The position numbers and the translations under genes are program-made. 64,000 nucleotides of DNA from Trichoplax adhaerens. Its lineage: Eukaryota > Animalia > Placozoa. Numbering within the stretch: position 1 is the first letter of the stretch; the number at the start of each line of letters is the position of its first letter. This document shows positions 1,349 to 59,400 of this stretch, piece by piece. The DNA is taken from positions 81,669 through 145,668 of the forward strand of contig NW_002060963.1 of the NCBI RefSeq assembly GCF_000150275.1. The letters are read 5' to 3'. Below the pieces are notes generated by a model that searched no databases, was not told the DNA's origin, and saw nothing but the letters and a program-made list of their open reading frames with translations.

Positions 1349-5543
<4,195 letters not shown>

Positions 5544-15438: not shown

Positions 15439-18400
15439 CTAGTTTTTGCTCTTTTTACTCCTACTGTCTTTCGAGTCTTCGGTGGGTCTTTTAGACTGTT
15501 TAGCTTCAGTCAAGAACTTGTCAAGACCAAATGGATCATCTTCATCCTTTTCAAATTGAACTGGACCATCACGTTGTAGATTATGATCTGTACCTTGGAA
15601 TTCAGTATCAGCGGCAAACCTAAAACAGTATAATTATCAGGTTAACGTTTAAAGTCAAATATGTTAGGGAATTTAGTTATTAGTCAATAAGTATATACTG
15701 ATATATTAAAAAAATTATCAACGATAAACAGCAATATCAACCGTTTCGTCTTGACCAGTGAATCCAGGTCATCACCATATATGTCTTTATCCAAATTTTT
15801 AGACGGTCTATAAATTGATGACGCGGAAGTTTTCTTCCAGGGTTTATCATACACATTGTAAGCATCATCTTCCGCAAAACCAGAGCCAACACCCTTTGAA
15901 AAGCAGTTTAGAAAGTTATCAATTTGTCCATGTCGAAAGATATAAAGTATGGTCAAAAGATAATTATACAAAGGGTAATATTATCCGTACTTCTGCTTGG
16001 TTAAAGAGTCGCTGATCGTACATTCCTTCGTCAGATTTTACATTGGCGGGCATTCCAAGAGCAATTTTCTCACTAATATCTCGATCACGTTGCCTTTCTA
16101 ATTTTGAACGTTTATCAGGAGCAGCTCTTGCAATTCTCCTATCTCGCTCACGTTCTTTGTGTCTGTCGTGTCGTAACTGATCACGTTCTCGGGCATCCTC
16201 GCTAAAGTCTATGGCAAAGATTAATACATTTGTACGTTGTAAGAAAATTATAATAGCTTTACAGATATCAGTAATAATTCTACCAGAATCTTGGGTTCGC
16301 AAGCCAATTCGTTCTTCACGTGCTTTCTGAGCTAGAAGTCTTAAACTTTCTTCTTTTCTTTCCTTTTCTTTCTGGGCTAATTTCTTTTCCATTTGGGCGC
16401 GAAGTTCAACAGATTCACGTGCTTTTCTGTCAGCTATATATAAGGCATCCGCCAGTTTAGAGAAATTTTCGTTAATTTTGACTTCTTGAGCACCTCGACC
16501 ATCCGCTGCAAGTCGTTTGTCCAAAGGTATTGTGTAGCCCTATATTATTGGATAGGGTATACAGAAAATATTTGTACATTTTGTATTTACGAACGTAGGT
16601 GAAGCTTCACTTTCAACGCGAATGAAGCTGTAAAAACTCAGCGTATCGTACCTTAGGATTTTTCCAGTTGGATATACACGGCGGAATTTTCCACTCTTGC
16701 TGCTCTTTAACGGTTACCTTGCGTGGCGGTGAATGCATAACAGGTGCAGGAGGGGATGGAGGACCTCGTGGAATCTTTTTGTTTGTTTTAAATTTGGGCG
16801 GATCTAAAGGATCTTTCTGCATTTCTACCATTCTAATTACTCTTTGTTTTGCGCCAGAATTATATGCAGGTCCTTGCTGAGCAGGTGTGTATCTGTCAGT
16901 ATGGAATGAGATGCATTTTTATTTAGAAGGAACTATCATTTTAATTCTACTATAATGTCCTGACACCTATTACTGTACGAGTATACTCAATGATTACAAA
17001 AATCTATGCAAATCTATGAAGGGCAACTAACCGAATGTATTGTGCAGGGGCCTGTTTTTCAGCAGGCCTGGCAGGCATTGCTGCAGAAACTTTGGTCTGT
17101 ATGATCTTTTCCAATGCTTCTCGTGTTTTCTGAGTCGTCTACGTAAATAGATATTTGAAAAGTAAATAATGAATCCCTCTTCATCAATCTCTTAATTTTA
17201 TGCAAAGCAGTAATTGATATTTATGATGTATAACTAGCAAATTTAGCACTACCTCTTCAATTTCTTCTTCATCTGGCATCGATAAAGACGGATCTTCCTG
17301 TTTTAAGTGTAATGGAATTAAATCGCGAAATTCTGAAAAGACAACCTTGTCTTTACTTTGTCCTTGCTTGATAATTGAATCATACTTGACACGACCTTCG
17401 GCATCAACTTGCATTGCTAAAGCGTTCCCAGTAGCCTAGAGTATATGTATATGCGTATATGTAATCGTATAAAGGGCGTTGTGTTAAAAATCTGTGTGAT
17501 TTATTCAGATTCCTGGTATAGATTATAGTACATCGAGGTAACTATCAGCAGTAATGTATTTTTTCCGATAATTAATTTAAATCGTAATGTATATAAGCCC
17601 TGGTCTAACCTTCTTGCGTCCCATGTTTAAAGGATACCTAAAATCCAGCAAACAAATATACATAGTGAGTTTGTTAAAAAAGTGATGTCAGATTTCATGG
17701 AAACAGAAAATTACACTGATTTCATTTGATATTTCATCTATAGAATATGAATAAAGTTACTTTCAGAACGATGAGCAGTAAATTGTTGTATTCGTATAAC
17801 CCTAGCCGCTAGAATGTCACTCCGATATACGTATACATACAGTACTAGTTGTCATACAGCAGATGTACCACACTAGTTACAAGCAAAACGAAAGCAATAC
17901 TAATAGTTGTTTTTATTTCCGAAATATATCAATCGCACTGCACTCACTGCGCCACATGAATTTCAGGAAAAGCTCCTCCGCTGCCGAAATCCTAGGGGTA
18001 AAAGAATATGTAGTTGATATTAGGAATAAAATATAAATTTAGCATTACAAAGTTTTAACGCTGATAAGCATTTAACCCTTTTTAAGTGATATTTTGCGAT
18101 TAAAGTTTAAAACTGGTGTAGATGCACCCCTTTATATGCTCTTGCTTAAGTATCCTGAAATGTTTACTATGAATACAATACTTATAAATATGATAACGGT
18201 TGGGTATGCATGCGGGAGCTTGTGTTGATTATTTCGCACTATGCCAGATTACCTCTGTTTATGAATAAAATCTGATAACTACTGGATTGAAGTACGACTC
18301 TGACGTAACCATTCTGCTCGCAACAGATACAGTATGTCTATGTAGCTGTCTATAAGAAATGAGATGGACGACTACTTTTACAAGTTTAAACCAATTTTAA

Positions 18401-20210: not shown

Positions 20211-21209
20211 GTATAACATACTGTATAGTGAAGGTCTATAAAAATGCCATCTCTCCGAAATCTATGGAGTCTGACTGACTGCGCATGTGCAAAGATGTAC
20301 AGTGAAGGACTGAAGGTCTATAAAAATGCCATATCTCTCTTCGAAATCTGATGAGTCTGACTGAGTTTCAGTGATGGCGTATAGTAGAATAACTAAAAAA
20401 ACAGTCAGCCTCATCATTATTTTGCATCAAATTCCCGTTTCTAGTCCCTCTCTCAACTTTTCAGCGTATAACATACTGTATAGTGAAGGTCTATAAAAAT
20501 GCCATCTCTCCGAAATCTGTGGAGTCTGACTGACTGCGCATGTGCAGTGATGTACGGTGAAGGTCTATAAAAATGCCATATCTCTCTTCGAAATCGGATG
20601 AGTCTGACTGAGTTTCAGTGATGGCGTATAGTAGAATAACTAAAAAAACAGTCAGCCTCATCATTATTTTGCATCAAATTCCCGTTTCTAGTCCCTCTCT
20701 CAACTTTTCAGCGTATAACATACTGTATAGTGAAGGTCTATAAAAATGCCATCTCTCCGAAATCTGTGGAGTCTGACTGACTGCGCATGTGCAAAGATGT
20801 ACAGTGAAGGACTGAAGGTCTATAAAAATGCCATATCTCTCTTCGAAATCGGATGAGTCTGACTGAGTTTCAGTGATGGCGTATAGTAGAATAACTAAAA
20901 AAACAGTCAGCCTCATCATTATTTTGCATCAAATTCCCGTTTCTAGTCCCTCTCTCAACTTTTCAGCGTATAACATACTGTATAGTGAAGGTCTATAAAA
21001 ATGCCATCTCTCCGAAATCTGATGAGTCTGACTGACTGCGCATGTGCAGTGATGTACGGTGAAGGTCTATAAAAATGCCATATCTCTCTTCGAAATCGGA
21101 TGAGTCTGACTGAGTTTCAGTGATGGCGTATAGTAGAATGACTAGAAAAACAGTCAGCCTCATCATTATTTTGCACCAAATTCCCGTTTCTAGTCCCTCT
21201 CTCAACTTT
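20211..21209. repeat. Four-copy tandem array (255/247/255/~242 bp, A-B-A-B higher-order structure) upstream of SNW1
   Basis: Units start with GTATAACATACTGTATAGTGAAGG at 20211, 20466, 20713 and 20968. Each unit holds two related sub-repeats (TGAAGGTCTATAAAAATGCCAT...GAGTCTGACTGA). Confidence 0.96.
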
Positions 21210-23054
21210 CCTATTATTATAACTTACAAGAAAGCAAGAAACTCTCTCTTTCTCTCTGCTTTTAGTACTATAGTTCCTCGGTCGAACCACTTGTACTGTA
21301 CTATAAAATGTCGACCGTCCTATTTTTTGGCCAGTTCAGTAACGTTCATGCTATTAGCGAAGTATGGCTGGACGGAGGGACACCTCATTCGTATGCGTTG
21401 TTACTCTGCACTACCGATGCTCGATTTTGTAATGACTTATTTTTTCTAAATTAAGTAATAATATTACATTAAATTTTATTCCTTTTACTAAATCCTGCTC
21501 CACAGCATAATGTCATAAATGTTTTAAATTGGTAAGAATGGTTTAGAAAGAGATACAGAAGATCCATACTACGCAACTATTTCATCAATTTTTCAGACAT
21601 TTTTGGTCTTTCTCAGCTGGGGGGATAGTACAGGTACATTTTGTGCCAGGTATTATAGGCATATTTTCAAGTTTTCTTCAATTAAAGACTCTACGCGTCT
21701 ACCTGTTTTGCGGTACATGCCATTTGGGTGTTTGCTATTCTACTCCATGGAAGGAATGATATTAGACCTTATGCCGAATTATATTTTAGCAATAAGCGTG
21801 ATGTAGTAATTACCTGTTGAGCGCAGTTATCAGTACGAAATACTCGTGTTGTATAAGGATATACTCGTATACAATATACAGTACTGTAGAGTATAGAGTA
21901 TAGAACATGTACTATAGTGTCAATTAATTAAAAGAAGTATCAAATTACTTATAGCGAACATTTCTCAACATTCGTGTGCATTCTACTGATTTATACTGTT
22001 AAAATATAAAAAAAAGAATTGAAAATTAATTTGCACCTAATGTCTACATTATCATAACATATCTGGTTTGTTTGGCCCACGAATGTATTGTACTAGAAGT
22101 GAGCAATTTTTGCTTCAGTTTTATCGAGTTAGTAAAGATGGTGGTTTACATATACACGGTATAAGTATCAATGTGGATGAAATAGATATTAAATCCAACA
22201 ATATTTTATTGCATTGAAAAAATATTCGCCGTGGATAGATGCCACAATCTTACTTAATACAAAAATCGAATTTAAATTTAAATTTAAAATTGATTTCGAT
22301 CGAACGGAGTGAATTAATCTATGAATGGTAGTGTGGCATAGACATAGGCAATACTGTAATCATCATGACATTAAACTACTGTATTACTGCCACAGTTTCT
22401 TGTTCCTGTCAAATAAAACGACAAATAGATTCAGGCTAAGAAATTACAATTGCGTATTTACCGTACAATAGATCGTCCACGATTATCAATCACAGAAGAT
22501 ACAACTTTCTCATGATTCTACTGTAATTAAGTGTAAACATAAATTTCTTTTATTGATTTCAATATTTCGCGAGTATAAATGGTAAGAAATGCTTCATAGT
22601 GGTTGTATAGGTAATCTTGCTAGAAAATAATTTTATCATGATAGCTATCTGATGGCTATTTATCTAGAGATTGACTGTTTTGATTAAGTCATACTCTCCA
22701 TTTTTGTTAAGGTATGCGTAGATTCCTCTATAAACAGTAGCCATCGCATCATGGTCAGCGTTATTACGTAGAATGAGGCATAATCAAATAAAACAAATCG
22801 GATAAAGTTATAAAAGGAAAACTATGTTAGACAATCTAATCGATTGTTGTTATACGAAAGCAGACAGAATGAGTGATGGTCATTCGAACATAGAATTAAT
22901 AAAGTTCGGTCAAATTTTATATTACTGAGCACAATGATAACTGTAGTCATAACACAACAATTTTGACAATTGATATAAAATTCGGATTTGGCCAATTTAT
23001 TTTATAAAGAATCAAATATAAATAAGGGTTTATTATAAAAAATTACTGACATGG

Positions 23055-30509
<7,455 letters not shown>

Positions 30510-39330: not shown

Positions 39331-40431
39331 TCACGGATGACCACGATTAAAAGGATGAAAAATTATACAAGAAGGAATTTTAAAATTTATAATGGTTTCT
39401 CGCCACTTTTTGGGTAAGTAAAAGAAATAAATCAGTACAAATGCTGATTTGATAGCTTTGTTATACGAAGCTATAAGAGCTGGCGTTACGATACAAGTTA
39501 ATAGGTAGAAAAGTTGAAATAAAGGAGCTAGAATGATTACAGTAGTATTATTATAATTTACAATGTCGCTAAAATTAATTTGAAGGAATGATATTATTAA
39601 CGAAAATATGGCCCAAGGAGAAGCTGGTATTAAGAAAAAGAAAGTTGTCACCATAGACATTTTGATAACACGATTGCGCCTTTTTCTCTTTATTTTAGCA
39701 ATGGATTGGATCTGTGAGTGTTCTCTTTTTAAGTAACGTATGATTAGAATATAGGACGTGACGATGACTATTGTTGGTAGAAGATACGTAAGGATAAAAT
39801 TGATCGTAAAATAAGCCTGAGCAAGTTGAGGGGAATCAAATTTAAGGTCGCATACTGTTAAGGAGAGTACATTATGATCAATAAAGTTTGAAAAAAAGTA
39901 TCCATTAACCCATCCAACGAGCCAAATCAGCACGTTTGTGACAAGGATAGCCTTAATATCATAGTTTTTCGCATTTGATTGAGTAACAACTCGATATCGA
40001 TCAAGTGCAATAAAAGCCAAAGATAGAACAGATACCGTGTACGAACCGTGATAAATCATCGAAGAAAGGGCACAGTTGCTATAATTACTAATCGATGATG
40101 CCGATTGTGACTGTGTTATGTTATTAGGTATGCTATTAGACGGAGCGGCCGAAACGGTTAAAGTACTCGAAAATATGAACACACAAGTGAGACATATAGC
40201 GTTAGCAAGTGCTTGATTGCATAATAGGTAATAGGTCGATTTATGGAAGGCTTTTTCGCGAATGATAACGAGAACCAGCAAGGAATTATTTATTATCGCT
40301 ATAATTAGGATTGGCATTAAGATTTTCGAGAAGGAAAATTGAAGTAAACTCATTGATTGCACAAACGACAGTACCAATCGTAAGCCGTCATTTGTCGGCG
40401 CCATGTTAACTTCATTTGATGGAGTTGTCAT
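39331..40431 (-). CDS. Single-exon class A (rhodopsin-like) orphan GPCR
   Basis: 366-aa ORF with 7 hydrophobic segments, TM1 INN, TM3 ALDRY, TM4 W, TM5 YLLP..SY and a basic ICL3. Confidence 0.92.
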   Translation of the reverse strand: MTTPSNEVNMAPTNDGLRLVLSFVQSMSLLQFSFSKILMPILIIAIINNSLLVLVIIREKAFHKSTYYLLCNQALANAICLTCVFIFSSTLTVSAAPSNSIPNNITQSQSASSISNYSNCALSSMIYHGSYTVSVLSLAFIALDRYRVVTQSNAKNYDIKAILVTNVLIWLVGWVNGYFFSNFIDHNVLSLTVCDLKFDSPQLAQAYFTINFILTYLLPTIVIVTSYILIIRYLKREHSQIQSIAKIKRKRRNRVIKMSMVTTFFFLIPASPWAIFSLIISFLQINFSDIVNYNNTTVIILAPLFQLFYLLTCIVTPALIASYNKAIKSAFVLIYFFYLPKKWRETIINFKIPSCIIFHPFNRGHP

Positions 40432-43176
40432 GATGAGTTAAGGCAACTGAAAAAATAGAGAAACGGTTATCTAGTAGTTCCTTTCATATTTTAATTCTGG
40501 CATATCTTGTTATTTTTTGATCAATGTATTTCTATATAAAGTAAGTACTATACGCCAGAAATATTTGATACTAGGTATTCTGATAATTATTGTTCAATTT
40601 CAGTAGTAATAAAATCGATTAGAAGATAAATTTAGTGATGAGCTATTCAGGCTTCTTAATTGGGCATCGTTTTTATTCTATAAGACTGACTGATTGATTC
40701 TAATTGAAATTAGAGATACATTATCTTTCAATTAAATCAAATCAATTGATTAGCTGCTATCTTATGAATACTATGCGAAAATTTAGTAATGAGATTATTA
40801 TTTAAAGTATAATAGTGATAGATTTACATTGGATCGTATTTATTCATATATTAAAGACAATTACAAATGTATAAACACAAAGTACTCATACTTAATATTA
40901 GTAGGATTTTATTGCTGGTTCATAGTCCCAAGATGTAAAATATATCCTAAATGAAAGGAGTAATAGATTCAATTTTATCATTGTCTCTTGTCTGTATTTA
41001 GTTAATAAAAGTACCGTATCTTATGTCAATTATCACAAATTTTATAAATCTCATTTTTGATGAATTACATCTTGATATACAGAGTTTACTTGTATATTGC
41101 TCTTGCAGGTATAGTAATTAGTGATACAGTACTGGACTTTAAAATTATTAAATTTATAAAATGCTGTAGCTATCAAAAACTATGAATGTGCTCGAGTTAA
41201 TTAGACAATTTCTTTTGTGCAAACGCGTGTATTCAAGTATTGTTAAAATAAGAAATTTTAAAATACGATAATTATAAGGCAAGATAATGAAAGTTTTGAT
41301 GTTCTTAAAGTATCGTATTCAATAATTAAATGGAAGTGAGTTTACATTAAATGTGTGTAACACAATCGATGTAGGATGTCATTTAAAAATTTTTTTAGTT
41401 CTAGACACTTTTCTTCAGCTCATTAATCTAACGTTGAAAAGTCTCGGTTATTTAATTTAATGGATTTTGAAGCCAGATAATATCTTTAATTCGTATCACT
41501 TTTACTCTGAAGGTTGCTATAAATATCAAATTTTAAGATTCCTAATGAGAATGATAATTCTATATTTAAATAAGTGATTGCCATTACTATATCTGGGTAC
41601 TTTATTTTCTGATGTAGAAACAGCTATCTCTACGTATGATAGATTATAATAACTTCTTCACAATCTGATATGCAGATACGGATTAGCTAATTAAAAATGT
41701 ATATTCTTAAGTGGTAGATTACGTATGTCAGACTCTGCCTACCGTACAAAACAAAATTTGAGATAGCTAATCCATCATATATGGCCAAATTATTGTATTA
41801 ATTATGCGGGGTATTGTAATATCTCCATTAATTTTCATGTTATTAAGATATAGTAGCTAGACGTACTTCAAACTTCTATATGCCACTGCAAATACTGTTC
41901 TATATGACTTGTTCTTAGAGCTTAGTATAATTTGATAAAATTGAATATTATTACCATTGTTTGTATCTTTTGCAACGTGGACATTAGTCAACAATTGATT
42001 TGTGGTATTATTGTTTATAATTTTGCTGCCATATTGGATATTACATGCCTTGTTAACTATTTTAAGGTATTTAAAGGCGGCAGTTTTAGTATAATTGAAG
42101 TCACATGTAATCGTTTTATATTACACCTATTATCTATTCGATGTTATTGCTTATGATAACTATTCTTAGATACAATTTAGCCTAGTAAATTATAATTGAT
42201 CGCTGTTATCTTTGCTATTATTTTTTTTTTTTTAAATACACGTTTGAAATAGAAGATGATGCAATAAGGATAGGCTGAGTTTATTTGTATCATCTATGTC
42301 GTTACAAATATCTTGAACCGTATTTTAAGCACACGATTTTTAAAGAGATGATCTTCAAATCGTTATAGCTTACAAACTAGGGTTTCTAATGTACTTATTC
42401 GTAGAACAATTATATCATCAATAATAGTTATATTTTGTCGCCCTATCATGATAGTATCCAATAATAAGCAGTAATAAAGAGTAAAAAAGAAATCTTAATA
42501 TTGTCTTTGGTTGATATATCTTGTATTTTACTAGCAGTATAGGTGAAAGTGAAGAAGAGAGCAAGTAATACATTAAGAACATTTTTTATATACCGCATTT
42601 GACTGATTACTATCGAAACTAGTCTTTTTTATTTGCGAGAAAATGTACTGTCATGTTCACTTCGTTAATATATCGATTACATATATCTTTATTTATAGTA
42701 TACGATCCGTAAAGTGAAGGAAAACTGTTATTGATATTAATTGTATCAATAATTATTTATTTGTGATGGTTTGATTGCAAGTATTAATTTTTTATCGGGT
42801 AGATATGACCTAAATTGAAGTTCTTTCAGAAGATTGACAAAAGATCAATGACTGTTATATTTGATCGAGAAGGATATGTTTTGGAAATATTTCATTTTAT
42901 GATATTAACAAATATTATTAATTATTTAGGAATATATAATACATGAACGGCAAAATAGATTTCAAACTGTTTCTTCATAATGAAGAACGAAAAATAGCAA
43001 CAGACTGCTTTCCATTCAAAACAGGTAGGAAATAGTCGCTACTAATTAGTTATTATCAATCACCAGGTTAAATAACAATTTAAAGAAGAAATTATTTACG
43101 CCAATAGCGCCTGATTACTTTAGTTGCTGAATACGCTGCTATGTAGTGTGGGAGTGTTAGTTCAGTTTAAAATAGG

Positions 43177-44313
43177 TTACTTTCCTTGTATATGGATAGA
43201 GCTTACTAATGTTACAGAGTGCCTTGTTTGATCATGAGTAAAGGGATGAAAAATGATGCAAGAAAGCAATCTAACATTTATCATAGCTTCTCGCCACTTT
43301 TTGGGTAGGTAAAAGAAATAGATAGACACATAAGTTGACTTTATAATTCTATTATATGCAGCAATAAGACTTGGCGTTATTATACAAGTTAAGAAGTAGA
43401 AAAGCTGAAAAATGGAATATAGAATGATTATGGTTACACTGTTGTCACTTATTAAGTTTCCGAAAGTAAGTTGAAGGAATGCTAGTACCAACGACGATAT
43501 AGCCCAAGGAGATGATGGTATTAAGAAAAAGAAAGTTGTTACCATAGCCATTTCCATGACACGATTACGTCTTTTTCTTTTTATTTTAGCAATTGATTTA
43601 ATGCCTGAATGTTCTCTTTTTAGATATCGCATGATTAATGAATATGAAACAATAATAATTGTTGCCGGTAAGAGATAAGTAAGGATAAAGTTTATAGTGA
43701 AATAAGCACGAACAAGTTCATGAGAGTCAAATTTGTAATCGCACAGTGACGGAATGAGTTGGCTATTTCCAGTAAAATTTGAAAAGAAGTATCCGTTAAC
43801 CCATCCAATCCCCCAGATCAGGGTATTAGCGATAAAGATAACTTTTGCATCGTAATTTTTCTTAGTATGTTGGGTAAGGACTCTATAGCGGTCGAGTGCA
43901 ATAACAGCTAGTGATAGCACCGATACTGTGTAGGAACTCTGATAAATCATAGAGGTAAGAGCACAGTCACTATAATTACCTTCTAGATATATTGATGGTA
44001 ATTGCGTAGTATTCATATCATTGAGAGAGCTAACAGTGCTTTTTACATCAAAAGAAAATGCTAAAATGCAGGCGAGACATATAACATTAGCGATCGCTTG
44101 ATTGCATAATAAATAATACGTAGATTTATGAAATGATTTCTCGCGAATGATAATTATAACCAGCAAAACATTATTTATTATCCCAATAATTAAGATTGGT
44201 ATTAAAATTCTCAAGAACAAGATTTGGAAAAACCCAAGAGATGCTATCCATTCACTAATTTTGCTATAAGCCTCTGTAGGAGTCGTGATGTTGCTATTAG
44301 ATTGGGTTGACAT
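43177..44313 (-). CDS. Single-exon class A orphan GPCR, tandem paralog of 39331-40431
   Basis: 378-aa ORF with the same motifs (FHKSTYYLLCNQA, ALDRYRV, AYFTINFILTYLLP, YLPKKWRE). Confidence 0.92.
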   Translation of the reverse strand: MSTQSNSNITTPTEAYSKISEWIASLGFFQILFLRILIPILIIGIINNVLLVIIIIREKSFHKSTYYLLCNQAIANVICLACILAFSFDVKSTVSSLNDMNTTQLPSIYLEGNYSDCALTSMIYQSSYTVSVLSLAVIALDRYRVLTQHTKKNYDAKVIFIANTLIWGIGWVNGYFFSNFTGNSQLIPSLCDYKFDSHELVRAYFTINFILTYLLPATIIIVSYSLIMRYLKREHSGIKSIAKIKRKRRNRVMEMAMVTTFFFLIPSSPWAISSLVLAFLQLTFGNLISDNSVTIIILYSIFQLFYFLTCIITPSLIAAYNRIIKSTYVSIYFFYLPKKWREAMINVRLLSCIIFHPFTHDQTRHSVTLVSSIHIQGK

Positions 44314-46199
44314 GATGACTCGACGTAATGTGTTAAAAATGAAGAAATCTAAGTATGCGGATTCCTTTTATATGGTGACCTAGTTATATTGTCTGATATG
44401 CGACCTTGTATTTATATAGAAGCAAGGATGATAGCATGACGTAACGGGCTTAGATGATTATTGTCTAGCTCAAAAGATGGCAAAGGTTAACTTTTTAAGA
44501 TGATTTGAATGACGAGCTATTCAGAAGTTTTTATTGTATTTTAATTTCATTCGGTAAGATTAAGTAAATTTAATTAGAATTTTGAGATACAATGCTGTTC
44601 AGTTAATTAATTGTTACTTTTGTTACAATTGTTGTGTAGTATATATTAGTATGATATCCATAGAAAATAAAATAGTAATGTTTTTTTAAAAGATTTATTT
44701 ATATGTTGATCGATGAGTATTTCATTGATACATTTAAGTAAACTATCAATGCAAAATATAATAATAGACCTGATTGTTATTTCTTGCCCTGTAAATTAAC
44801 ACGGTAATTAATGTGGTACAATTTGAAAGACTATTCTGCCAATTTTACATTTGATTGCTTTCAATTGATAAAACCCGCCGATATCACCATTTGGCTACTT
44901 ACCGTAATTATTATAATTATTGTTAGATTGGATAGAATTTAACGTTGATCTAGACTTTCTTCCTAGATACATGATCCATATGTGCAACCCGATATCTGGG
45001 TATCGAAAATGACATTGACAAGTGGATAAAAAGACACCGCATATTCAAATACGGATATAAATGTTAATTATTTAAATATCAATGTTAATGGGATGAAGTT
45101 GAAACGTCTAGCACCTACGGGATACAACCTATCGTGTTGTTTACGCTACATCAACTCGGATATGATGTCATATTACATTAACTTGGAATATAATAGATGT
45201 TGTATATTAAGTAGATTTCAAGCATGATGTTTTTGTATTATTTACTCTTAATAGCTACATTATGTAATGGTCATGTAGAGCGATACCTTATTCTCGATGA
45301 CATCATTATTTATAATTTTTGTAGTAGACTGCAGTCGGTGTTCTTAATGGATAGTTTAATATTGTATTTTTGAGGTTATTGATCCGTTGTTATCTACTTG
45401 ATTATGAACAAAGAAAACTATACGCAGACTAATCTTGATTCGATAACTATAAATTTCACTGATTTGCTTTTCGCAACGAGTAATTCATTTGTAGCGGCAG
45501 TACTTTCATTCTATCTGGATATTATTGTAAAGTCGCAAATTATCATTGCAAAAGGTTCAATATTCATTACTTCAGATCCTTCTTCAGCTTTACTAACAAT
45601 CTAGTAACTTGACATTATATTTCCTATTTATTTCCGATCTCTTTCTAGTTGTAGATACTACAGACTTTGTGGAATAAAGAGTCTACATGTCTATTGACGT
45701 AATTTGGCAATGTCGCGTAGTCCTCCATCGCTGAATATGAAATTAATTCTGACTGATTTAGTATTTATTACCAGATGATGGATTTGTATTGCAAGTACTA
45801 TATATGGTATAGCAATGATAAGAAGCTTCGTCTGCCTAGCTTTATCATTGATTAAAAGGATTTTTCATATAATACCCTTAATATCCGACTTTTAAATGAG
45901 TTTGTTGTTTTCGGGATTCAAGCGATGCACTGAATCACTTCTTGTACTCGTCAAGGACAACGACTACTCATCGGAGTTTTATTTCCTATATGACCCCACT
46001 TGAATATCATCCATTCTAATTAATCAGCTAGACAAAAAGGAAATGATCCAACAATGAAACTGCTTGTATATATACTTGATGTAAACCGTTTAACCTTCGT
46101 TCTACACGCTAAATCAAGCTGCTTACATATGAAGATGAAAGTTAATATCGACACAGTTCATAACAGTATGTACATGGCCATCTAAGATAACGCTAAATA

Positions 46200-51745: not shown

Positions 51746-53410
51746 TATTGTAGATATTGTCTGGTAATACGGAATAGCTGTGATTCTAAGTTAGAATATA
51801 GCCCTTCTATAATTATGTCACTACTGTATGCTACCATAATATGAATGAATTGTTGATAGTATGCAAGGAGTAAGATAAATTTTGAAAAGATACAGCTCTG
51901 TATCCATTTAACGTGTAACTGTAGACAATAATCAAACTATATTGGTAATTGTTGGTGTTTGATATTTCAGCTGCACAAGCTGTCATTTCATGCATATCGT
52001 AGCAAACTGTGATAAAACGAATATAATATTAAGAACATCATTTATTGTAAGAAATGTAATGAACTATGATTGATTTTTACAAATCCAACGATAGTAGATG
52101 TGGACATGGATCATCTAGTTGCTACGTTATACAATACGGTATACTGTGAGTTTTATTTCTTAGATTATAGTGGTCAAATATGCGATTGGGAATTGTGCAG
52201 AATTACTACTTCCTATTGTACAGTACTTTGTAACTCATTTGTCGTTGTTGCAGTTAATATTGCGAATAGGTACATATTACAATTTCGTAATTAACCTGGC
52301 AACTAGACTTTTGCATGTCTGTTGGGCATATTAATTCTATAAAAATTAGCCACTATTTGTTTCAGTGTTTATTGGATTTGTGATTACTACAAGTCATAAG
52401 ATAATAGTTTTTGGTATAAATAAATTCTAGTTGATCCATATCTGTCACTTCGGTTTGTTAATGAAAATAGCTTAAGACTATTCCTATGTAGCTTCAGTAT
52501 ACGAAAAAGCTGTTATTTCGCTATTAACCTAGATGTTAACAAACTACAATAATTTCATTAGTATGCGGATTTAAATGTTGATATTAACCGTCTTAAATAG
52601 TATCAGTTTTGAAGTGTGTTACGAACGAAAAATTGAAAACAGCCGTTAATGCTTACAATTATTATGACGGCGGGTAGTAGTAAGATACAAGCTAATACCT
52701 TCTAGAAGGGGCGTAAATGAGTATTTATATGCCTGGTATGTGTCTCAGAATGCGTCATTTTATTCTACGTGTTACATAGAATATTTCCATGCTAGTTCAG
52801 CCTGTTATCGATGTACGTCGTATTATCTTTTTATATGATTTATTTGACTTCATAAATTACAGGATTTAAACACGATAAGGAAGCTATATCGGTATTATGT
52901 GATCATCAATTACGCTTATGATGATAGCACTATGATTACCTATCATAGCATCAGACAGATTTTGAATCTTCGATTAAAAATACCTTGATAGAGGTTCAAT
53001 CATAGTTATCAGTTGATTTCAGTAATATCAGGCTCATTGTGCTTACAATATGCTCGACTGGATATTGTTAAATATACGTAGATGATAGCTAAGATTTAAT
53101 TAATTATTCCGATCCTTCACTCGCGTACTAGCAAGCAAGATGAAGATATCTCTATTATCAGTCAATTTTCGAGGAGTAAACTATTGAATCATACTATAGA
53201 AAGCTATTGTGCGTAATTTCTACTTAGAATAAGCGTGTAGCTTATTGAAATCATAATTATTAGATATTAAAGGTTTAAATTAAATCGTAACATAAGATGG
53301 AAGATTCAAGAGATAATACGTAAAAGGAAAAGAGTTAGGAATTAGATTGATGCTAGAGGGTGGTCTACAGATAGCGGATCAGTTACGACCTCAATCCTAT
53401 CGAAGCACCC

Positions 53411-56400
53411 TTACTGCTTCTTAACATTTGGCTCCAAAACGAGAAGAAGTTGTGCAATTTGAGTTTCAGGTAATAGTTTTTTCGTCTGAAAATCGGCCAT
53501 TGCAGTTTTGACTTTGTGTAACTAATTCGAAAGAGTTTTCAAGTTTAGTCCAATTTATTCGCATTAAAAAGTATACGTAAAAGTATCTAAATTTTAGAAC
53601 TATAATTGATCCTAGTATATTTTTTGAAGTTTGTGTATGTGGCCTGGTATAGTATTAATTACTGTTTATAAAATTTAATATGCCTTAATCTCCTAAATAA
53701 TAGTTACTGGCATAAGTAATACTGCTATTTTTTTCTGCGAGTGCTATTATTTTACAAACTAAAGAATTTTATTACATATAAATAGATTATAGAGTAGCAA
53801 TATTTATTATAGAACAACTTTTCAAAAGTAAGTAGGCCGTCTATTTGAATTAGCTATTGCAGAACCTGTAAGCTGGGAAATGTTGCAGGTAAATTGAAAA
53901 TAGAAATGGATAACTTCTTATGTATCCAATATACATTGTACTTACTAGAGCTACTACCTCTATCCAATTCGATGTTGCAGGCGATGTAAGATTTTGCTTA
54001 GGGTTGCTCGTTGGATCCATTTTCGATTGACAGAAAGAAATAAAGCATTGGCATAATTGACTTATATCCATGATATCGTCTAATTTGGGATTGATCTTAT
54101 GTGTTATGTCAGCATTCTCGCTGTTCGTATTTTGCAGTATTTGAGAACAGGAAAAATTACCCAACAATACTCTAATCTTTTCAATCTGCTAAAGTTTTAA
54201 ATTTAAAGAATGACCTTGATCAGATAAATTACTTAGCAAATGAGCTATATTTAAGAATAATATAGTAGTGCTAGTTTCAAGGATACCGCATGCAAATTGT
54301 AATAGTATATGAGCACGCTTTGTGTAGAACTAAAGCAAGTAGCATTTAATGCAATAGAACAGTCTGGTATCAATATTAAAATGTATATGTAACCTGACAC
54401 ACTAAGCAGTTAGCTTTGATCATATTTCAATGGCTATGATTGAACCAGATAGTAAATTACCTTATTGCTGCTGACAATAAAGATAGAATCAGTTTTAATA
54501 CAGCCATGAATAATATCACGGGCATGGAATGACTGCACAGCAAGGGTAACATCGCGTAGAATGTGGAAAAAAGATTGAGGAGTTAGGTAGCAAGGCTGGT
54601 AAGCTATCAGATCGCTAAGTAGTTCTGTATCCTGATTGTTTAAGGCATAGCAGGTAATTCTAGTAAATTGCAATTAAATAAAATAATCTTTTAGATGAAT
54701 TTCTAGCTTAATCTAAATAAAACTTCAATCTTTATAGCATATCTAATACTCACAGTTTATTGCTAAGCGAAAATGACGGTTTTTCGTGAGAGCTTTTACT
54801 TTCACTTTCATCCCGAAACCATAAACATTCTACAATATTTTGAAATTTGTAATTACTTGATTTTACTTTAAGAAAAAATGCTTTTTCTCTTTCCCAACAG
54901 GATCGATCCTCGAGGCTATAGATTTTAAGTAATCCAGAGGTGGATAGATTTTCTGGACTTAATTCGTTGACTTTCATATGAATCTATAAAGTAAATACGC
55001 ATACGAATGTGTACCAGTATGCAAACAGATATGAAGCTTAATAATGAAATAGTAGACACAATTTCAAAAAATTTAAAATTGAATGTTAAGTATCGTATGT
55101 TAATGATCTATTGTTGATGTTTCAGGAATATTAGCTACTATTAATTAGTTGTAGGATAGTCATTTATAATTGCATGGGAGAAAATTACTAGCAGTATCGG
55201 AATGATTATCTGGTTACGTGATTGATGTACAGCAAATCATGTGATTAACTAAGCCGATTATTATGGATTTGTTCCATTTATTAGGGCAGAATTTAATCCC
55301 AAGTTGTTAGAATGAGCGATTCTATATACTGCGATTGAAATTTACCGATTCGATATTGCTAGTGTAGAATACCAGATGAAGATCGAGTAATTTATGACGA
55401 TTAACGTGCTCTAGGAGCTTAATCACTTCCTGTAATTGAAGCTGGTAACATAAAGTAACATTATCTGCTTTATATAATTATATATGTTGAGGTAAAGTAT
55501 ATACAGAATGGAGCAGCTTTAGTTATATCAGCTTAAATATAGAATTTTCAAAGTAAGGAGGTTAAGCCAGATTGTAATTGAAATAGGATTATATGCCATC
55601 AGCATAGGTTTTACGTAGAATTACTGCAGCTTAATTTGCCTTACAGTGATGATTTGAAGAGTATAAATAGGATAGTAAAATATAACGTAGCGTACGATAT
55701 ATGATTTTTTATATTATGAAAAGAATTGATTTGGTTACCTTTGGGTTCGTGTTCTGTTTAGCTGCAGCTGCTAGTGCTTTATTTCTGTTAGGTTCCAATT
55801 CTGTTTAAAATAAGAAATAATAGTTTGCTCGTAGTTAAGACACATAAGAGCATCAAATTTTCGAGTTCTTTACGTCTATCTCCCTAAGATAAGGTGATAT
55901 TATTATAATAGATTACTTAATTTATGATACAGTATAGATTTTATGTATCAATATTACTGTATACTAGAGAAGTAAACAAGACCTTGGTATAACATGATCA
56001 ATATTAATATTATGCAGTATCATACGTATTATCATACTCTGAACTTATTTTGTGGTAGATTAAAATATAATAATTATATAATATTTAGGTGGTAAGTTTA
56101 TAAAGACTTTACTAGATAAAGGAACCGTCATAAACTAAATTAATTATTGGTGACAGCATTGAATTAAGATCTTTAAATTTTGATCTGCAATAATTGCCGT
56201 ATTTCAGGTTACGATTTAAGTTCGATTATAATTGCAGTCAATAGCTGTTTAAAATATTTGGATAAGGCTTTACTCTTTTATCAGATAATGCTTGTTAGCC
56301 TATTTTTATATTTGTAAATTTTGACGGATGTGTAAGGTTATAACTATAAATACATGAACATGTGAAATAGTCAACAGGTGAAACACATCTCTAGATTCAC

Positions 56401-59400
56401 ATTTATAATACGTTATTACTGATTATGTACTTTGATTACTAGTTATTTATGTGTATTTAGTATTTATAGTAGCTATTTATTTTACAGCCGTTCAGTATTC
56501 AATTGTAGAATTATTTCTCTGCATTTATACAGCAAAAAATTTAGTTTAGTGCGCGAACTTTAGAAAGCTTATTCGAAAAATCTTTTTAGATTGCCTTGCT
56601 ACAAACTACAAGTTTTTCAATTGATAGCAAGTAGTAACAAGTGATATATCATACCAAGAATTACTTTTATTAATTCTTGATTATATATACTTTAAAAGCG
56701 ATTGCTTATGTTATTGTCAATAGATTTAATTCAGTTGCGGGTACTTACCTCCACTACATGCGTCAGAATTAGCATTAGCTTCATAGGAGCAAAGTATACA
56801 ACAAGAGCAGCAGGATCGTATTTTTGTTATTATCAGCATAGCGTTATTAACAAAAGTTGTTGTATAAATTGTGTAAATAATAGGATTGATACATGAATTA
56901 AGAGGTAGAGATAAAACTGCAATAAACGGCAATACATGGGTATCAAGTTCTTGTTCAATTGTCGCTTGAATTAATACAACATATAATGGCATCCAACAGA
57001 TTAAGTCGGTGATAACAATAGTGATCATTTTAGCTCGGACGATTTTTTCGAATTTGGAAATTTCTCGTTTAGCTTGTTTCCGTGATTTTGTCAAATAAAC
57101 CAAGATTATTATATACATAATTGCGATAAAGATCCAAGTTAGTAGAGTAGTACCACAGTAAGTTAGAAGCCAGCTTAGGTAATAAATATTATCTGTATTT
57201 CCAGGTAAGCAAGCGCTGTTCGTACCATACAATCTATAAGATGCAGGCTGATTATAGCTATAAACAAGTGGCAAAGCGGTAAACGTAGCTGATACGGTCC
57301 ATAACACGATTAAAACGAGAGTAATTAGCTTATAAGAAAGGCGATAGTTCTCAAAAGGATAGACTAGAAATAGATATCGATCCAAAGTGATGAGGAAAAG
57401 GATAAATGTTGACATTAGGCTAGAGATCGCTACTAAAAATGAAGCCATAACGCATATAACACTATGTAACCATGTCTCGAGATATTGAGCATAAATACCA
57501 AAATAGTAAATATCAGTTACGGCAATCGTGATTAAGTAAATTCCCATAATGAGATCAGCAAAGGACAGATTTATTAACAATGTTTGAACCACCATATTAT
57601 TCTTTACAAAGCTTTTAACATGCCATACAATGGAAATAATGTTGCCTACTATAGATAAACTACCAATAATCCAGACGAAGATACGTAATACGTCATGAGA
57701 TAGGATATTAGAGCAGGTTGATATGCTAAATTGATCTGGTAAAGGCTCGCAAAGAGTTGTAGTTGGCGGCGCGTCACAGCATAAGTATTCTCGTGTTGAA
57801 TATCTATATGAATTTTGTGTCGTGTAGAGTAAATACCATGATGTGATAAAGTGCTTCAAAATGTTATAATAAGAACTAAGATTTATCGTGCAACATTATT
57901 AGATAACATAAATTGGATTCGTCCAACACGACTTGGAACTAACTACTGCACTTTCAATCAAGATATCTATGATTTACATATGCAATTTTTTACTGGTATT
58001 TTTTAGCAAGTTAATTATATCTTGTGAATTAAGTCGCAAGATCTAAACTGAATTTACTATTGCAAGGTCGATCAATGGCTATCACTTTTAATTAAAGCAA
58101 CACATCGAATTCTTTATAATACTAAATTACTTTGCACAATCCAATAATATCTCAAAATCTTAATATAATAGTTACTATAAAATGTCTACAATATATATTG
58201 TTAATATCTTTTAGAAATAGATACTTGTATAAACATGCAATCAAACGTACAACTTGCACTATTCTCTTCCAATCTCATGAATAATATTTAGGACTTAATT
58301 AATCTATTATCGGTAAATCAATCTTAATCTAATTTTGGGACTGTACTACATGTGAGTTGTCGAGTAACTTACTCGTTCTGGTAGTATTTGACAATAATAT
58401 AGAATTTGATCATATCCTGAATTAATATTTACTATATTTCATTAAGAGTATGGTTTCAGAACTGACTGGCAATTTAATGGATTTAACTTTAAGATTATGA
58501 CAAAAGAAAAATAGTACGTTAAATTTTCAAACCTTTTCATATCAACTTACAAGTCACGAATGTTGTAAAGAGTAATAAACGCTTCTCTACTAAATTCTTG
58601 TATAGGATTATTTCGTAAAATTCTATCAAAAGTTAAACGAGCGATAGTTGCTAATATTTAATTTTTACTAAATCGTCTGTATTAATATCGTTGTTATAGT
58701 AGATTAAAAGAAATGAACAATAGTAAGAATATCATTACCGTACGTATTTATGGTTATTGATCGACTTACAGTGTTTTAAGATTTGATAATTTCGAAAAAC
58801 ATCGGTCTTTTAATGTACTTATTTTGTTATCACTTATATCGCTAAAATATATACAAATGAAATCTTGCCGATTAATAAATAAATTCTAAGAACATAATTA
58901 TGCGATTGAGTATCATATTAAATGTTGCAAATTCTAAGATTTACTACATCAGCTTTGCCATCCATTACTACTTTTAAATCGTTAACAAGCTTGGATCAGA
59001 AATAAGAAAGATATCTTATAAAAATTTAAAGCTTGTAATTTTGAATAAGATAATTAGTTTAGCAAGTTCAGTAGCAGGATAGACTTTAAATTATGATCAT
59101 TTAATCGATGCATGTATTTTAAAAGATTGCATAGATCTCGGTTTCCATAAGATTGAAGACTTAGTTTATTCCTCTTTTGTATTATTGTGCATTTATATGC
59201 GTATATTAGATTGTTCCGCATTAGTATATTGTGAAAGCTTGACTACTTTGCAGTTACTGTATGCATTTTTATACATACACTTTATTAGTAAAGCGTGAAA
59301 TGAAGATAAAAAATTTACTAAATATCTTTAAATATTAATCGTAATTTCGATTTTTTTAGTCAGTAAACCTATATACATTATAGTACGCTATCGGAAGTCA

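What the first reader, a model, noticed from the sequence alone, without database searches (positions are those of the whole stretch)
53411..57803. LRR-GPCR fused in frame to a degenerate TKL/TGF-beta-receptor-like pseudokinase
Seen in sequence: the 7TM exon has a strong donor (G|gtaag at 56749, phase 1). It joins four further exons in matching phase (55800-55739, 54983-54754, 54659-54461, 54185-53946) and a plausible last exon (53521-53411), with no stops. The tail reads GLLKIYSLEDRSCWEREKAFF...FQNIVECL...KLITCY...LSDLI...HILRDVTLAVQSFHARDIIHGCIKTDSIFIV...VLLGNFSCSQ...DISQLCQCF. Established knowledge: this is the order of kinase subdomains II-VII, and it resembles type I/II TGF-beta receptor kinases (VKIF...SW.RE, HENIL, LIT.Y, IAHRD.KS.NIL, .ADFG). 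The beta3 Lys and alphaC Glu are kept. HRD has become HGC and DFG has become NFS. No Gly-rich loop or APE is visible, and the C-lobe looks shortened. Inference: a single-chain LRR sensor + 7TM + dead-kinase scaffold receptor. GPCR-kinase fusions are known mainly from oomycetes and amoebae (GPCR-PIPK, GPCR-TKL). I do not know this architecture in animal LGRs, but cannot check the literature here.
Basis: partly seen in the sequence, partly recalled or inferred. Interest (0 to 1): 0.9.

Follow-up and report, generated by a model that had tools for sequence, protein, structure and literature searches.

The report
LRR-GPCR with fused dead-kinase tail
This Trichoplax gene splices a hormone-receptor-type (LGR) G-protein-coupled receptor in frame onto a shortened, catalytically dead protein-kinase-like domain, a design I found described in no paper on animal receptors; it is one of about 15 such genes in this genome.

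Summary
RNA contigs from two separate studies join the 7TM exon (57803-56749, minus strand) through every proposed exon to the stop at 53411. All introns are GT..AG. The one correction is that the fifth tail exon mostly starts at 54188, not 54185; both are in frame.

The 7TM exon is LGR-type (best solved relatives RXFP1, LHCGR, TSHR, FSHR). It follows a long run of 72-nt LRR exons.

At least 12 paralogs in the genome (Trichoplax adhaerens, 105.6 Mb) have the same 7TM-plus-tail layout, with the same intron phases. Tail dN/dS is 0.22-0.41.

Kinase evidence:
- The exon-4 family profile hits solved protein kinases (best E 1.2e-5).
- The exon-3 profile hits only the TGF-beta receptor 2 N-lobe (E 0.24, weak).
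- An AlphaFold model of a paralog's tail (pLDDT 82, pTM 0.80) matches kinases only: ACVR1 Z 14.8, ACVR2A, TGFBR2, IRE1, SYK.

The beta3 Lys and alphaC Glu are kept. The Gly-loop, HRD Asp, catalytic Asn, DFG Asp and APE are missing, and the C-lobe is shortened, so this is a pseudokinase.

The scan had already noted the same design at three paralogous loci in this genome. I did not search or fold the joined spliced protein of this window. Function is inferred, not shown.

The parts
58770..58841 (-). 72-nt LRR exon, reading DISDNKISTLKDRCFSKLSNLKT
   Evidence: The RNA joint 58622|58770 is seen in X5 and X6. The upper boundary is predicted from AG/GT sites and an open phase.
58551..58622 (-). Last 72-nt LRR exon before the 7TM exon, reading ILRNNPIQEFSREAFITLYNIRD
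   Evidence: Both boundaries are given by RNA joints.
56749..57803 (-). Hinge end plus the whole rhodopsin-class 7TM domain and helix-8/Cys-rich segment. The donor is G|GTAAG in phase 1. Unspliced read-through would stop at 56728-56726.
   Evidence: Pfam 7tm_1 E 4.2e-28. PDB best hits are RXFP1 2.5e-38, LHCGR, TSHR and FSHR. RNA joints are seen on both sides.
55739..55800 (-). 62-nt linker exon (phase 1 to 0) with no recognisable Gly-rich loop
   Evidence: RNA joints 56749|55800 and 55739|54983. No Pfam hit.
54754..54983 (-). Pseudokinase N-lobe exon (beta2, beta3 Lys in LLKIY, alphaC Glu in WEREK, beta4 QNIVE)
   Evidence: RNA joints. Family alignment A2 has invariant Y, W, E, F and N. The A2 profile hits only TGFBR2 residues 23-79, E 0.24.
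54461..54659 (-). Hinge (ITCY), alphaD, alphaE and the catalytic-loop remnant, where IIHGCIKTDS stands in place of HRDxKxxN
   Evidence: RNA joints. Pfam Pkinase E 0.013, positions 83-134 of 263. PDB hits are all kinases. Family profile A1 gives best E 1.2e-5.
53946..54188 (-). DFG remnant (LLGNFS) plus the helical rest of a shortened C-lobe. A minor alternative acceptor lies at 54185.
   Evidence: RNA joints 54461|54188 (X5, X6, X7) and 54461|54185 (X7). Family alignment A3. No sequence hit outside the family.
53411..53521 (-). Last coding segment (36 codons plus TAA). It is not conserved in the paralogs.
   Evidence: RNA joint 53946|53521. Only a self-match in the genome.
52828..53410 (-). 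3' UTR with AATAAA at 52844-52839
   Evidence: The X5 and X6 contigs run on unspliced to about 52858 and 52828. Sequence.

Best explanation
The locus is the 3' half of one gene of Trichoplax adhaerens. It encodes a very large LGR-type receptor with three parts: a long LRR ectodomain built from one-repeat 72-nt exons, a rhodopsin-class 7TM domain closest to relaxin and glycoprotein-hormone receptors, and a cytoplasmic tail of about 280 residues spliced in frame behind helix 8. Exons 3 to 5 of the tail form a shortened protein-kinase-like fold. It cannot transfer phosphate. There is no Gly-rich loop. The HRD Asp is Cys here and is never Asp in 12 paralogs. The catalytic Asn is Ser. The DFG Asp is Asn. 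There is no APE, and only two helices follow the DFG remnant. The beta3 Lys and alphaC Glu, which hold the N-lobe together, are kept. The gene belongs to a family of about 15 paralogs with the same 7TM-plus-tail layout, and the tail is under purifying selection. Shown: the single transcript, the LGR identity, the kinase-like fold (on a paralog), the loss of catalytic residues, and the selection. Inferred: the dead kinase works as a receptor-tethered scaffold or docking module. In this view, ligand binding to the LRRs moves the 7TM bundle, which repositions the pseudokinase. The pseudokinase then pairs with or allosterically controls a partner, most plausibly an active TKL or TGF-beta-receptor-type kinase or its substrate, or it tunes G-protein or arrestin coupling. 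My odds are about 0.9 for the architecture, 0.85 for the pseudokinase call, and 0.4 for the scaffold mechanism.
For: Transcript: spliced contigs from two studies cross every junction, with no depth in the introns. LGR identity: Pfam 7tm_1 4.2e-28; RXFP1 2.5e-38, LHCGR, TSHR and FSHR; at least 26 clear 72-nt LRR exons upstream. Family: every 7TM paralog at 53-63% identity has exon-3- and exon-4-like exons (exon-5-like ones were located in most) 1-2 kb downstream on the same strand, with the same lengths and phases. About 20 exon-4 copies score at least 61 bits, and the next hit scores 27 bits. Kinase homology: exon 4 gives Pfam Pkinase E 0.013, PDB kinases only, and a family-profile best of 1.2e-5. 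In 1.84 billion representatives, the ten hits I scanned against Pfam were five family gene models and five true kinases. Paralog gene model P0006 (TRIADDRAFT_60495) scores 7tm_1 5.5e-26 plus PK_Tyr_Ser-Thr 2.4e-4. Fold: AlphaFold2 of paralog tail P0001 gives pLDDT 82 and pTM 0.80. Foldseek finds at least 500 hits at E<=1e-3, and all those listed are kinases. VIA-align gives ACVR1 Z 14.8 (185 aligned, 3.6 A), ACVR2A 14.6 and TGFBR2 14.4. The ESM Atlas gives feature score 0.95 to kinases and TM 0.65 to a TGFBR2-type cluster. Dead motifs: alignments A1-A3. Selection: dN/dS is 0.22-0.41 for unsaturated paralog pairs, and both strain differences in this gene's tail exons are synonymous.
Against: No tail sequence reaches Pfam's gathering score (15.4 bits for exon 4; 20.9 against 23.1 for P0006). 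Exons 3 and 5 alone, the exon-5 profile and a 3-sequence whole-tail profile found no kinase in the PDB. Contigs cannot exclude a second isoform that keeps the first tail intron and stops at 56726. No partner, ligand or cell type is known, so the mechanism is inference only.
Confidence: 0.82

Rival explanations
1. The tail is an atypical but active kinase that uses non-canonical residues, as WNK or CASK do, so the receptor phosphorylates targets directly.
For: The beta3 Lys is kept in 10 of 12 paralogs and the alphaC Glu in all 12. One paralog keeps H-R-H, and two keep the Asp of the DFG remnant.
Against: No paralog has the HRD Asp, and only 1 of 12 has the catalytic Asn. There is no Gly-rich loop and no APE or activation segment, and the C-lobe is shortened. 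This is more loss than in any known atypical active kinase (my knowledge).
Confidence: 0.07
2. The tail is a decaying relic of an old GPCR-kinase fusion and has no present function.
For: The catalytic motifs are gone. Exon 5 and the last exon diverge fast, and exon 6 has no paralog match. Several family members are pseudogenes with stops.
Against: dN/dS is 0.22-0.41. Reading frames are open with conserved intron phases in at least 12 paralogs. Core residues are invariant. Where a copy decays, stops appear in both the 7TM and the tail (C1394:267-269 kb). The same layout occurs on an independent metagenome scaffold.
Confidence: 0.08
3. The 7TM gene and the kinase-like exons are two genes, or the fused mRNA is a rare read-through form.
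For: Unspliced read-through of the 7TM exon meets a stop at 56726, which would give an ordinary LGR. Contigs drop rare variants and show no transcript ends.
Against: The only assembled form in two independent studies is the fused one, with a canonical GT..AG junction 56749|55800. The phases match. The same adjacency holds at every close paralog. Older gene models of paralogs also join the 7TM and the tail (P0005, P0006, P0008).
Confidence: 0.04

Closest known systems
LGR receptors (RXFP1/2, FSHR, LHCGR, TSHR, LGR4-6), including the 46 LGRs reported in T. adhaerens (PMC9545775)
   Same: LRR ectodomain, hinge and rhodopsin-class 7TM. The best PDB matches of the 7TM exon are RXFP1 2.5e-38, LHCGR, TSHR and FSHR. 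The very high number of LRRs fits the 41 'T. adhaerens-specific' LGRs described in PMC9545775.
   Different: Known LGRs end in a short unstructured tail. This one carries a kinase-fold domain of about 225 residues. PMC9545775 never uses the word 'kinase'.
GPCR-TKL/K of acanthoecid choanoflagellates and GPCR-TK of choanoflagellates and sponges (PMC12716839)
   Same: A 7TM domain with a C-terminal protein-kinase-family domain on one polypeptide. In GPCR-TKL/K the domain is TKL-like.
   Different: Their 7TM domains are not LGR-type (the GPCR-TKL/K 7TMs clustered with no other eukaryotic GPCR family), and no LRR ectodomain is described. Their kinase domains are recognisable by Pfam/InterPro and presumably active. 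[quoted passage not shown]
GPCR-bigrams of oomycetes and amoebozoans (GPCR-PIPK/RpkA, GPCR-TKL; PMC5784254, PMC6033456)
   Same: The principle of a GPCR fused to a C-terminal signalling-enzyme domain.
   Different: The 7TM families and accessory domains differ, and the accessory domains there are catalytic. [quoted passage not shown]
TGF-beta/activin receptor kinases (STKR family, TKL group)
   Same: The N-lobe signature K-[IL]-[FY]..W..E..[FI][FY]...N-I aligns with TGFBR2 VKIF..SWKTEKDIF..HENIL. ACVR1, ACVR2A and TGFBR2 head the structural matches (Z 14.4-14.8, up to 18% identity). An Atlas TGFBR2-type cluster has the best TM by query, 0.65.
   Different: Those are single-pass receptors with active kinases and full C-lobes. 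Here the likeness is statistically weak (E 0.24), and structurally it ties with IRE1, SYK and IRAK4.
Receptor-tethered pseudokinases (kinase-homology domain of receptor guanylyl cyclases, JAK JH2, plant LRR-RLK pseudokinases); named from my own knowledge
   Same: A dead kinase fold attached to a receptor and used as a regulatory or scaffolding module. Plant LRR-RLKs also pair an LRR ectodomain with a (pseudo)kinase.
   Different: All of those are single-pass or soluble. None sits behind a 7TM bundle.

Membership tests
LGR (LRR-containing rhodopsin-class GPCR) | Rhodopsin-family 7TM domain | tested here: met
   Pfam 7tm_1 E 4.2e-28, 99 bits against a cut-off of 30.5.
LGR (LRR-containing rhodopsin-class GPCR) | 7TM closest to the glycoprotein-hormone, relaxin and LGR4-6 receptors | tested here: met
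   The top PDB hits are RXFP1 2.5e-38, LHCGR 1.6e-32, TSHR and FSHR. Non-LGR GPCRs score 3e-17 or worse.
LGR (LRR-containing rhodopsin-class GPCR) | N-terminal LRR ectodomain on the same transcript | tested here: met
   Two LRR exons are joined to the 7TM exon by RNA contigs. At least 26 further 72-nt LRR exons lie upstream on the same strand. The X5 contig extends 4378 nt further 5'.
Eukaryotic protein kinase (ePK) fold | Bilobal kinase fold | tested here: met
   This was tested on paralog tail P0001, not on this gene's own joined tail. AF2 gave pLDDT 82 and pTM 0.80. All listed Foldseek hits are kinases, best 3e-6. VIA-align Z is up to 14.8 over 185 residues.
Eukaryotic protein kinase (ePK) fold | Pfam Pkinase or PK_Tyr_Ser-Thr above the gathering score | tested here: not met
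   Exon 4 scores 15.4 bits against 31.7. Paralog P0006 scores 20.9 against 23.1 and 20.0 against 31.7.
Eukaryotic protein kinase (ePK) fold | beta3 Lys and alphaC Glu | tested here: met
   The window has LLKIY and WEREK. Lys is kept in 10 of 12 paralogs and Glu in 12 of 12. Both align with the TGFBR2 Lys and Glu.
Active protein kinase | Gly-rich loop GxGxxG | tested here: not met
   Nothing like it occurs in exon 2 or at the start of exon 3. One paralog (P0006) has a remnant, LGEFPLKSGY.
Active protein kinase | HRD catalytic Asp and the catalytic-loop Asn | tested here: not met
   IIHGCIKTDS aligns with IHRDIKPEN. The Asp is kept in 0 of 12 paralogs and the Asn in 1 of 12.
Active protein kinase | DFG Asp and the APE motif | tested here: not met
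   The window has LLGNFS. Two of 10 paralogs keep GDF. No APE is present anywhere. The DFG register rests on motif spacing and the model's strands.
TGF-beta receptor (STKR) kinase family | Sequence or structure closer to STKR kinases than to other kinase families | tested here: inconclusive
   The only PDB hits of the exon-3 profile are TGFBR2, but at E 0.24. ACVR1, ACVR2A and TGFBR2 rank first, but within 1 Z of IRE1, SYK and IRAK4.
TGF-beta receptor (STKR) kinase family | Single-pass receptor with a three-finger ectodomain, and a GS box in type I | tested here: not met
   The domain sits behind a 7TM bundle. No GS-like segment is seen in exon 2.
GPCR-bigram / GPCR-kinase fusion | 7TM and a C-terminal kinase-family domain on one polypeptide | tested here: met
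   In-frame RNA junctions run from the 7TM exon to the tail.
GPCR-bigram / GPCR-kinase fusion | A catalytically competent accessory domain | tested here: not met
   The catalytic residues are missing. Biochemical activity was not testable here.

The most novel reading that the evidence does not exclude
Placozoa evolved a class of rhodopsin-type (LGR) receptors that signal through a tethered, TGF-beta-receptor-derived pseudokinase. The dead kinase would pair with an active receptor kinase or its substrates, so that one ligand-binding event feeds a G-protein-independent, kinase-type pathway. This would be the first such link between the LGR and TGF-beta-receptor signalling modules in an animal.
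Probability: 0.2. Interest if true: 0.85.

Novelty: new variant of a known kind. Interest (0 to 1): 0.68.

Why it matters
GPCR-kinase fusions are known from oomycetes, amoebae, choanoflagellates and sponges, and none has been characterised functionally (PMC12716839). PMC5784254 states that such fusions are rare or absent in metazoans. This locus shows, with transcript evidence, a rhodopsin-class hormone-receptor-type GPCR of an animal carrying a kinase-fold domain. The design is expanded to about 15 genes and kept under selection. That gives a concrete system for asking how a 7TM bundle can drive a tethered kinase-type module. It may explain part of the puzzling LGR expansion in an animal without neurons. 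It also shows that domain surveys relying on Pfam thresholds and old gene models miss such architectures: TRIADDRAFT_60495 carries only PF00001 on record.

Tried and rejected
- Single-sequence PDB searches with exon 3 and exon 5 found nothing, and neither did the exon-5 family profile.
- A whole-tail profile of only three gene models (A6) found no kinase. I read this as too few sequences, because the 12-sequence exon-4 profile does find kinases.
- A five-protein profile (A5) was swamped by the 7TM part and only confirmed the LGR kinship.
- The top five hits of the exon-4 profile are TALE-repeat proteins. They are summed weak matches of an 'LTPE..V..I' word to many repeats, so I treat them as artefacts.
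- The search for homologous proteins with the tail of P0006 returned only P0006 itself, because of its word and length limits.
- A weak exon-3 profile hit at C1412:807525 is a Lys/Glu-rich frame, not a kinase.
- The search of earlier findings by place was blank.
- The 'two genes' reading is rejected on the RNA junctions.
- Chance similarity to kinases is rejected. Sequence profiles, Pfam on a paralog, an AlphaFold2 model searched with two structure aligners, the ESM Atlas and the position of every hit (alphaE/catalytic loop for exon 4, beta2-beta4 for exon 3) all agree.
Exons were searched one by one by reference, and database gene models of paralogs served as stand-ins for the spliced tail.
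- No complex prediction was run, since I claim no specific binding partner.


Full report
**What is in the sequence.**
On the minus strand, 57803-56749 is one open exon. It encodes the end of a Cys-rich hinge, a complete rhodopsin-family 7TM domain (Pfam 7tm_1, E 4.2e-28) and a Cys-rich helix-8 region. It ends at a G|GTAAG donor in phase 1. The window is AT-rich eukaryotic DNA. The assembly has 105,631,681 bases in 1414 contigs. A paralogous gene model on its 1,607,406-base contig is named TRIADDRAFT_60495 of Trichoplax adhaerens, so the organism is T. adhaerens.

**Transcript evidence.**
I laid Logan contigs of four runs on 52900-58800. In X5 (study P2, a 6903-nt contig) and X6 (study P3, a 2941-nt contig), a single contig joins ...58770|58622-58551|57803-56749|55800-55739|54983-54754|54659-54461|54188-53946|53521 and continues unspliced to about 52858 and 52828.
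- Every skipped part is CT..AC on the + strand, which is GT..AG for the minus-strand gene.
- These runs have no depth inside the introns, so they behave as RNA. They differ from the window at a few bases, so they are not the assembly's own reads.
- X7 (study P4) shows the last two junctions in smaller contigs.
It is 54188 in X5, X6 and one X7 contig, and 54185 in another X7 contig. This NAGNAG pair is in frame either way.
- An AATAAA lies at 52844-52839, just before the X6 contig's end at about 52828.
Contigs cannot exclude a minor intron-retaining isoform.

**The receptor part.**
The 7TM exon's best solved relatives are relaxin receptor 1 (2.5e-38), LHCGR, TSHR and FSHR, far ahead of other GPCRs. 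Upstream, two 72-nt one-repeat LRR exons are joined to it by RNA. A simple scan finds at least 26 more 72-nt LRR exons on the same strand, reaching about 18 kb past the window's end. The X5 contig extends 4378 nt further 5'. This fits the 'T. adhaerens-specific LGRs' with unusually many LRRs described in PMC9545775, which counts 46 LGRs in this species and never mentions a kinase.

**A gene family with the same design.**
- Searching the genome exon by exon shows about 20 copies of the exon-4-like sequence. A few are assembly duplicates or pseudogenes. There are also 16-18 exon-3-like copies.
- Every 7TM paralog at 53-63% identity has exon-3- and exon-4-like exons 1-2 kb downstream on the same strand; exon-5-like ones were located in most.
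- Exon lengths (76-77, 64-68 and about 70-83 codons) and intron phases are the same, with AG/GT at the expected places.
- 7TM paralogs at 41% identity or less mostly lack the tail. One distant copy (C1407, 33% identity in the 7TM) has a much more diverged version.
- Copies that decay carry stops in both the 7TM and the tail (C1394:267-269 kb).
- Older gene models of paralogs already join the 7TM and the tail (P0005, P0006, P0008).
- An unrelated ENA metagenome scaffold carries a 7tm_1 gene followed about 900 nt later by an exon-4-like frame. Other short contigs show exon-3-, exon-4- and exon-5-like frames in order.

**Is the tail a kinase?**
I searched the window's tail exon by exon and did not join the exons.
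- Exon 4 alone gives Pfam Pkinase E 0.013 at profile positions 83-134. It also gives 18 weak PDB hits, all protein kinases, all aligned at alphaE and the catalytic loop; IIHGCIKTDSIFI lies over IHRDIKPENIFI.
- A 12-sequence profile of the exon-4 family (A1) finds 452 PDB sequences at E<=1. Apart from five TALE-repeat artefacts, the 60 listed are kinases, best 1.2e-5.
- Against 1.84 billion representatives, the same profile finds family members first and then many multi-stretch hits. The ten hits I scanned against Pfam were five family gene models and five true kinases.
- The exon-3 family profile (A2) hits only the TGF-beta receptor type 2 kinase, residues 23-79 (beta2 to beta4), at E 0.24. 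The family's K and WxxE lie over the receptor's VAVK Lys and alphaC Glu.
- The exon-5 profile finds nothing.
- Paralog P0006 scores 7tm_1 5.5e-26 plus PK_Tyr_Ser-Thr 2.4e-4, just under Pfam's cut-off.

**Fold.**
As a stand-in for the spliced tail, I folded database gene model P0001. It is exons 3-5 of the paralog closest in exon 4, and is 33, 48 and 20% identical to this window's three exons. The alignment had 34 rows and included the window's exons as separate rows.
- AlphaFold2 gave mean pLDDT 82 and pTM 0.80. The order of elements is beta2, beta3, a long alphaC, beta4, beta5, alphaD, alphaE and four short strands, then only two helices.
- Foldseek against the PDB returns at least 500 matches at E<=1e-3. 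All those listed are protein kinases or pseudokinases, best 3e-6.
- VIA-align gives ACVR1 Z 14.8 (185 residues, 3.6 A), ACVR2A 14.6 (18% identity) and TGFBR2 14.4. IRE1, SYK and IRAK4 lie within one Z unit.
- The ESM Atlas, with its own model, agrees. The feature score is 0.95 to kinase clusters, and the best TM by query is 0.65, to a TGFBR2-type receptor cluster.

**Dead, shortened, but kept.**
Across the family:

| Kinase feature | This window | Paralogs |
|---|---|---|
| beta3 Lys | kept (LLKIY) | 10 of 12 |
| alphaC Glu | kept (WEREK) | 12 of 12 |
| HRD Arg | Gly | Gly in 11 of 12 |
| HRD Asp | Cys | never Asp |
| Catalytic Asn | Ser | 1 of 12 |
| DFG Asp | Asn | 2 of 10 |
| APE | absent | absent in all |
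| Gly-rich loop | absent | remnant in one paralog only |

About 70 residues follow the DFG remnant, where a canonical kinase has about 110-120 (my knowledge). The last coding exon of this gene has no match in any paralog, so the conserved domain is exons 3-5. dN/dS for the tail is 0.22-0.41 in the paralog pairs whose dS is not saturated. The two differences between the RNA contigs and the window inside the tail exons are both synonymous.

**How it most likely works.**
Shown: one mRNA encodes LRRs, an LGR-type 7TM and a conserved kinase-like domain without catalytic residues. Inferred: the domain is a pseudokinase that acts as a receptor-tethered scaffold or switch. Ligand binding at the LRRs would rearrange the 7TM bundle and so the position or surface of the pseudokinase. 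The pseudokinase would then recruit or allosterically control a partner, or tune G-protein or arrestin coupling. An active TKL or TGF-beta-receptor-type kinase is the most natural partner, given the N-lobe likeness. I put this mechanism at about 0.4. Residual catalysis gets about 0.07 and a functionless relic about 0.08.

**Comparison with what is known.**
- GPCRs fused to kinase-family domains are described in oomycetes and amoebozoans (PMC5784254, PMC6033456), in acanthoecid choanoflagellates (GPCR-TKL/K), and in choanoflagellates and sponges (GPCR-TK) (PMC12716839).
- PMC12716839 included the T. adhaerens proteome. [quoted passage not shown] It notes that no such receptor has been characterised.
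- PMC5784254 calls metazoan GPCR-bigrams 'rare or even nonexistent'.
- Full-text searches for Trichoplax or placozoa with GPCR and pseudokinase, kinase domain or fused found nothing relevant.
- I therefore file this as a new variant of a known kind. The principle (7TM plus kinase-family domain) is known. The LGR-type receptor, the animal host, the dead and shortened kinase and the gene-family expansion are not.

**Earlier notes of this scan.**
After my own analysis I found three earlier follow-ups in the same genome that describe the same architecture at paralogous loci (s1-749458, s1-771347, s1-760346). They agree with this report. They are not independent evidence and did not change my reading.

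**Limits.**
- The fold and the Pfam near-hits are for paralogs, not for this gene's joined tail.
- The TGF-beta-receptor origin is suggestive only.
- The run types are guesses by the index, supported here by the spliced contigs.
- Function, ligand, partners and cell type are unknown.

Noticed in passing
window 54185-54190: The acceptor of the fifth tail exon is a NAGNAG pair. 54188 is used in X5, X6 and one X7 contig, and 54185 in another X7 contig. The difference is one Gln.
   Followed up: partly
G000:C775:2-661 (outside the window): A small contig is 100% identical to residues 1-220 of this window's 7TM exon. Likewise, C1288 repeats C1394:307-312 kb and C1266 repeats C1400:1540 kb. This looks like assembly redundancy or allelic contigs, so raw paralog counts are slightly inflated.
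   Followed up: no
window 39334-40437 and 43180-44367, minus strand: Two long open frames (368 and 396 aa) look like intronless rhodopsin-type GPCRs and are similar to each other. They have no LRRs and no tail.
   Followed up: no
window 25795-26307, minus strand: These exons belong to an apparently intact protein kinase with HRDIKP and DFGLA motifs, CK1/TTBK-like by eye. It is unrelated to the pseudokinase tail.
   Followed up: no
window 20494-21223, minus strand: Three tandem copies of a short open frame start CKIMMRLTVFLVILLYAITETQSDSSDFEERYGIFIDL. This may be a repeated small secreted-protein exon or a repeat element.
   Followed up: no
window 15967-16918 and 2455-3986, minus strand: By eye, these open frames resemble an SNW/SKIP-type splicing factor (the PPKFK..NWKN stretch) and a kinesin-light-chain TPR protein. 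They look like ordinary housekeeping neighbours.
   Followed up: no
L042 = G000:C1407:2280000-2285500, minus strand: A distant LGR paralog (33% identity in the 7TM) is followed by much more diverged exon-3-, exon-4- and exon-5-like frames (LKSFSNKERNMWANEARIL...). The fusion may therefore predate the expansion of the close subfamily.
   Followed up: partly
L048 (ENA metagenome scaffold, 2961 nt): A 7tm_1 gene at 873-1754 is followed by an exon-4-like frame at 2629-2895 on the same strand. The scaffold comes from an environmental assembly, presumably another placozoan. The organism was not established.
   Followed up: partly
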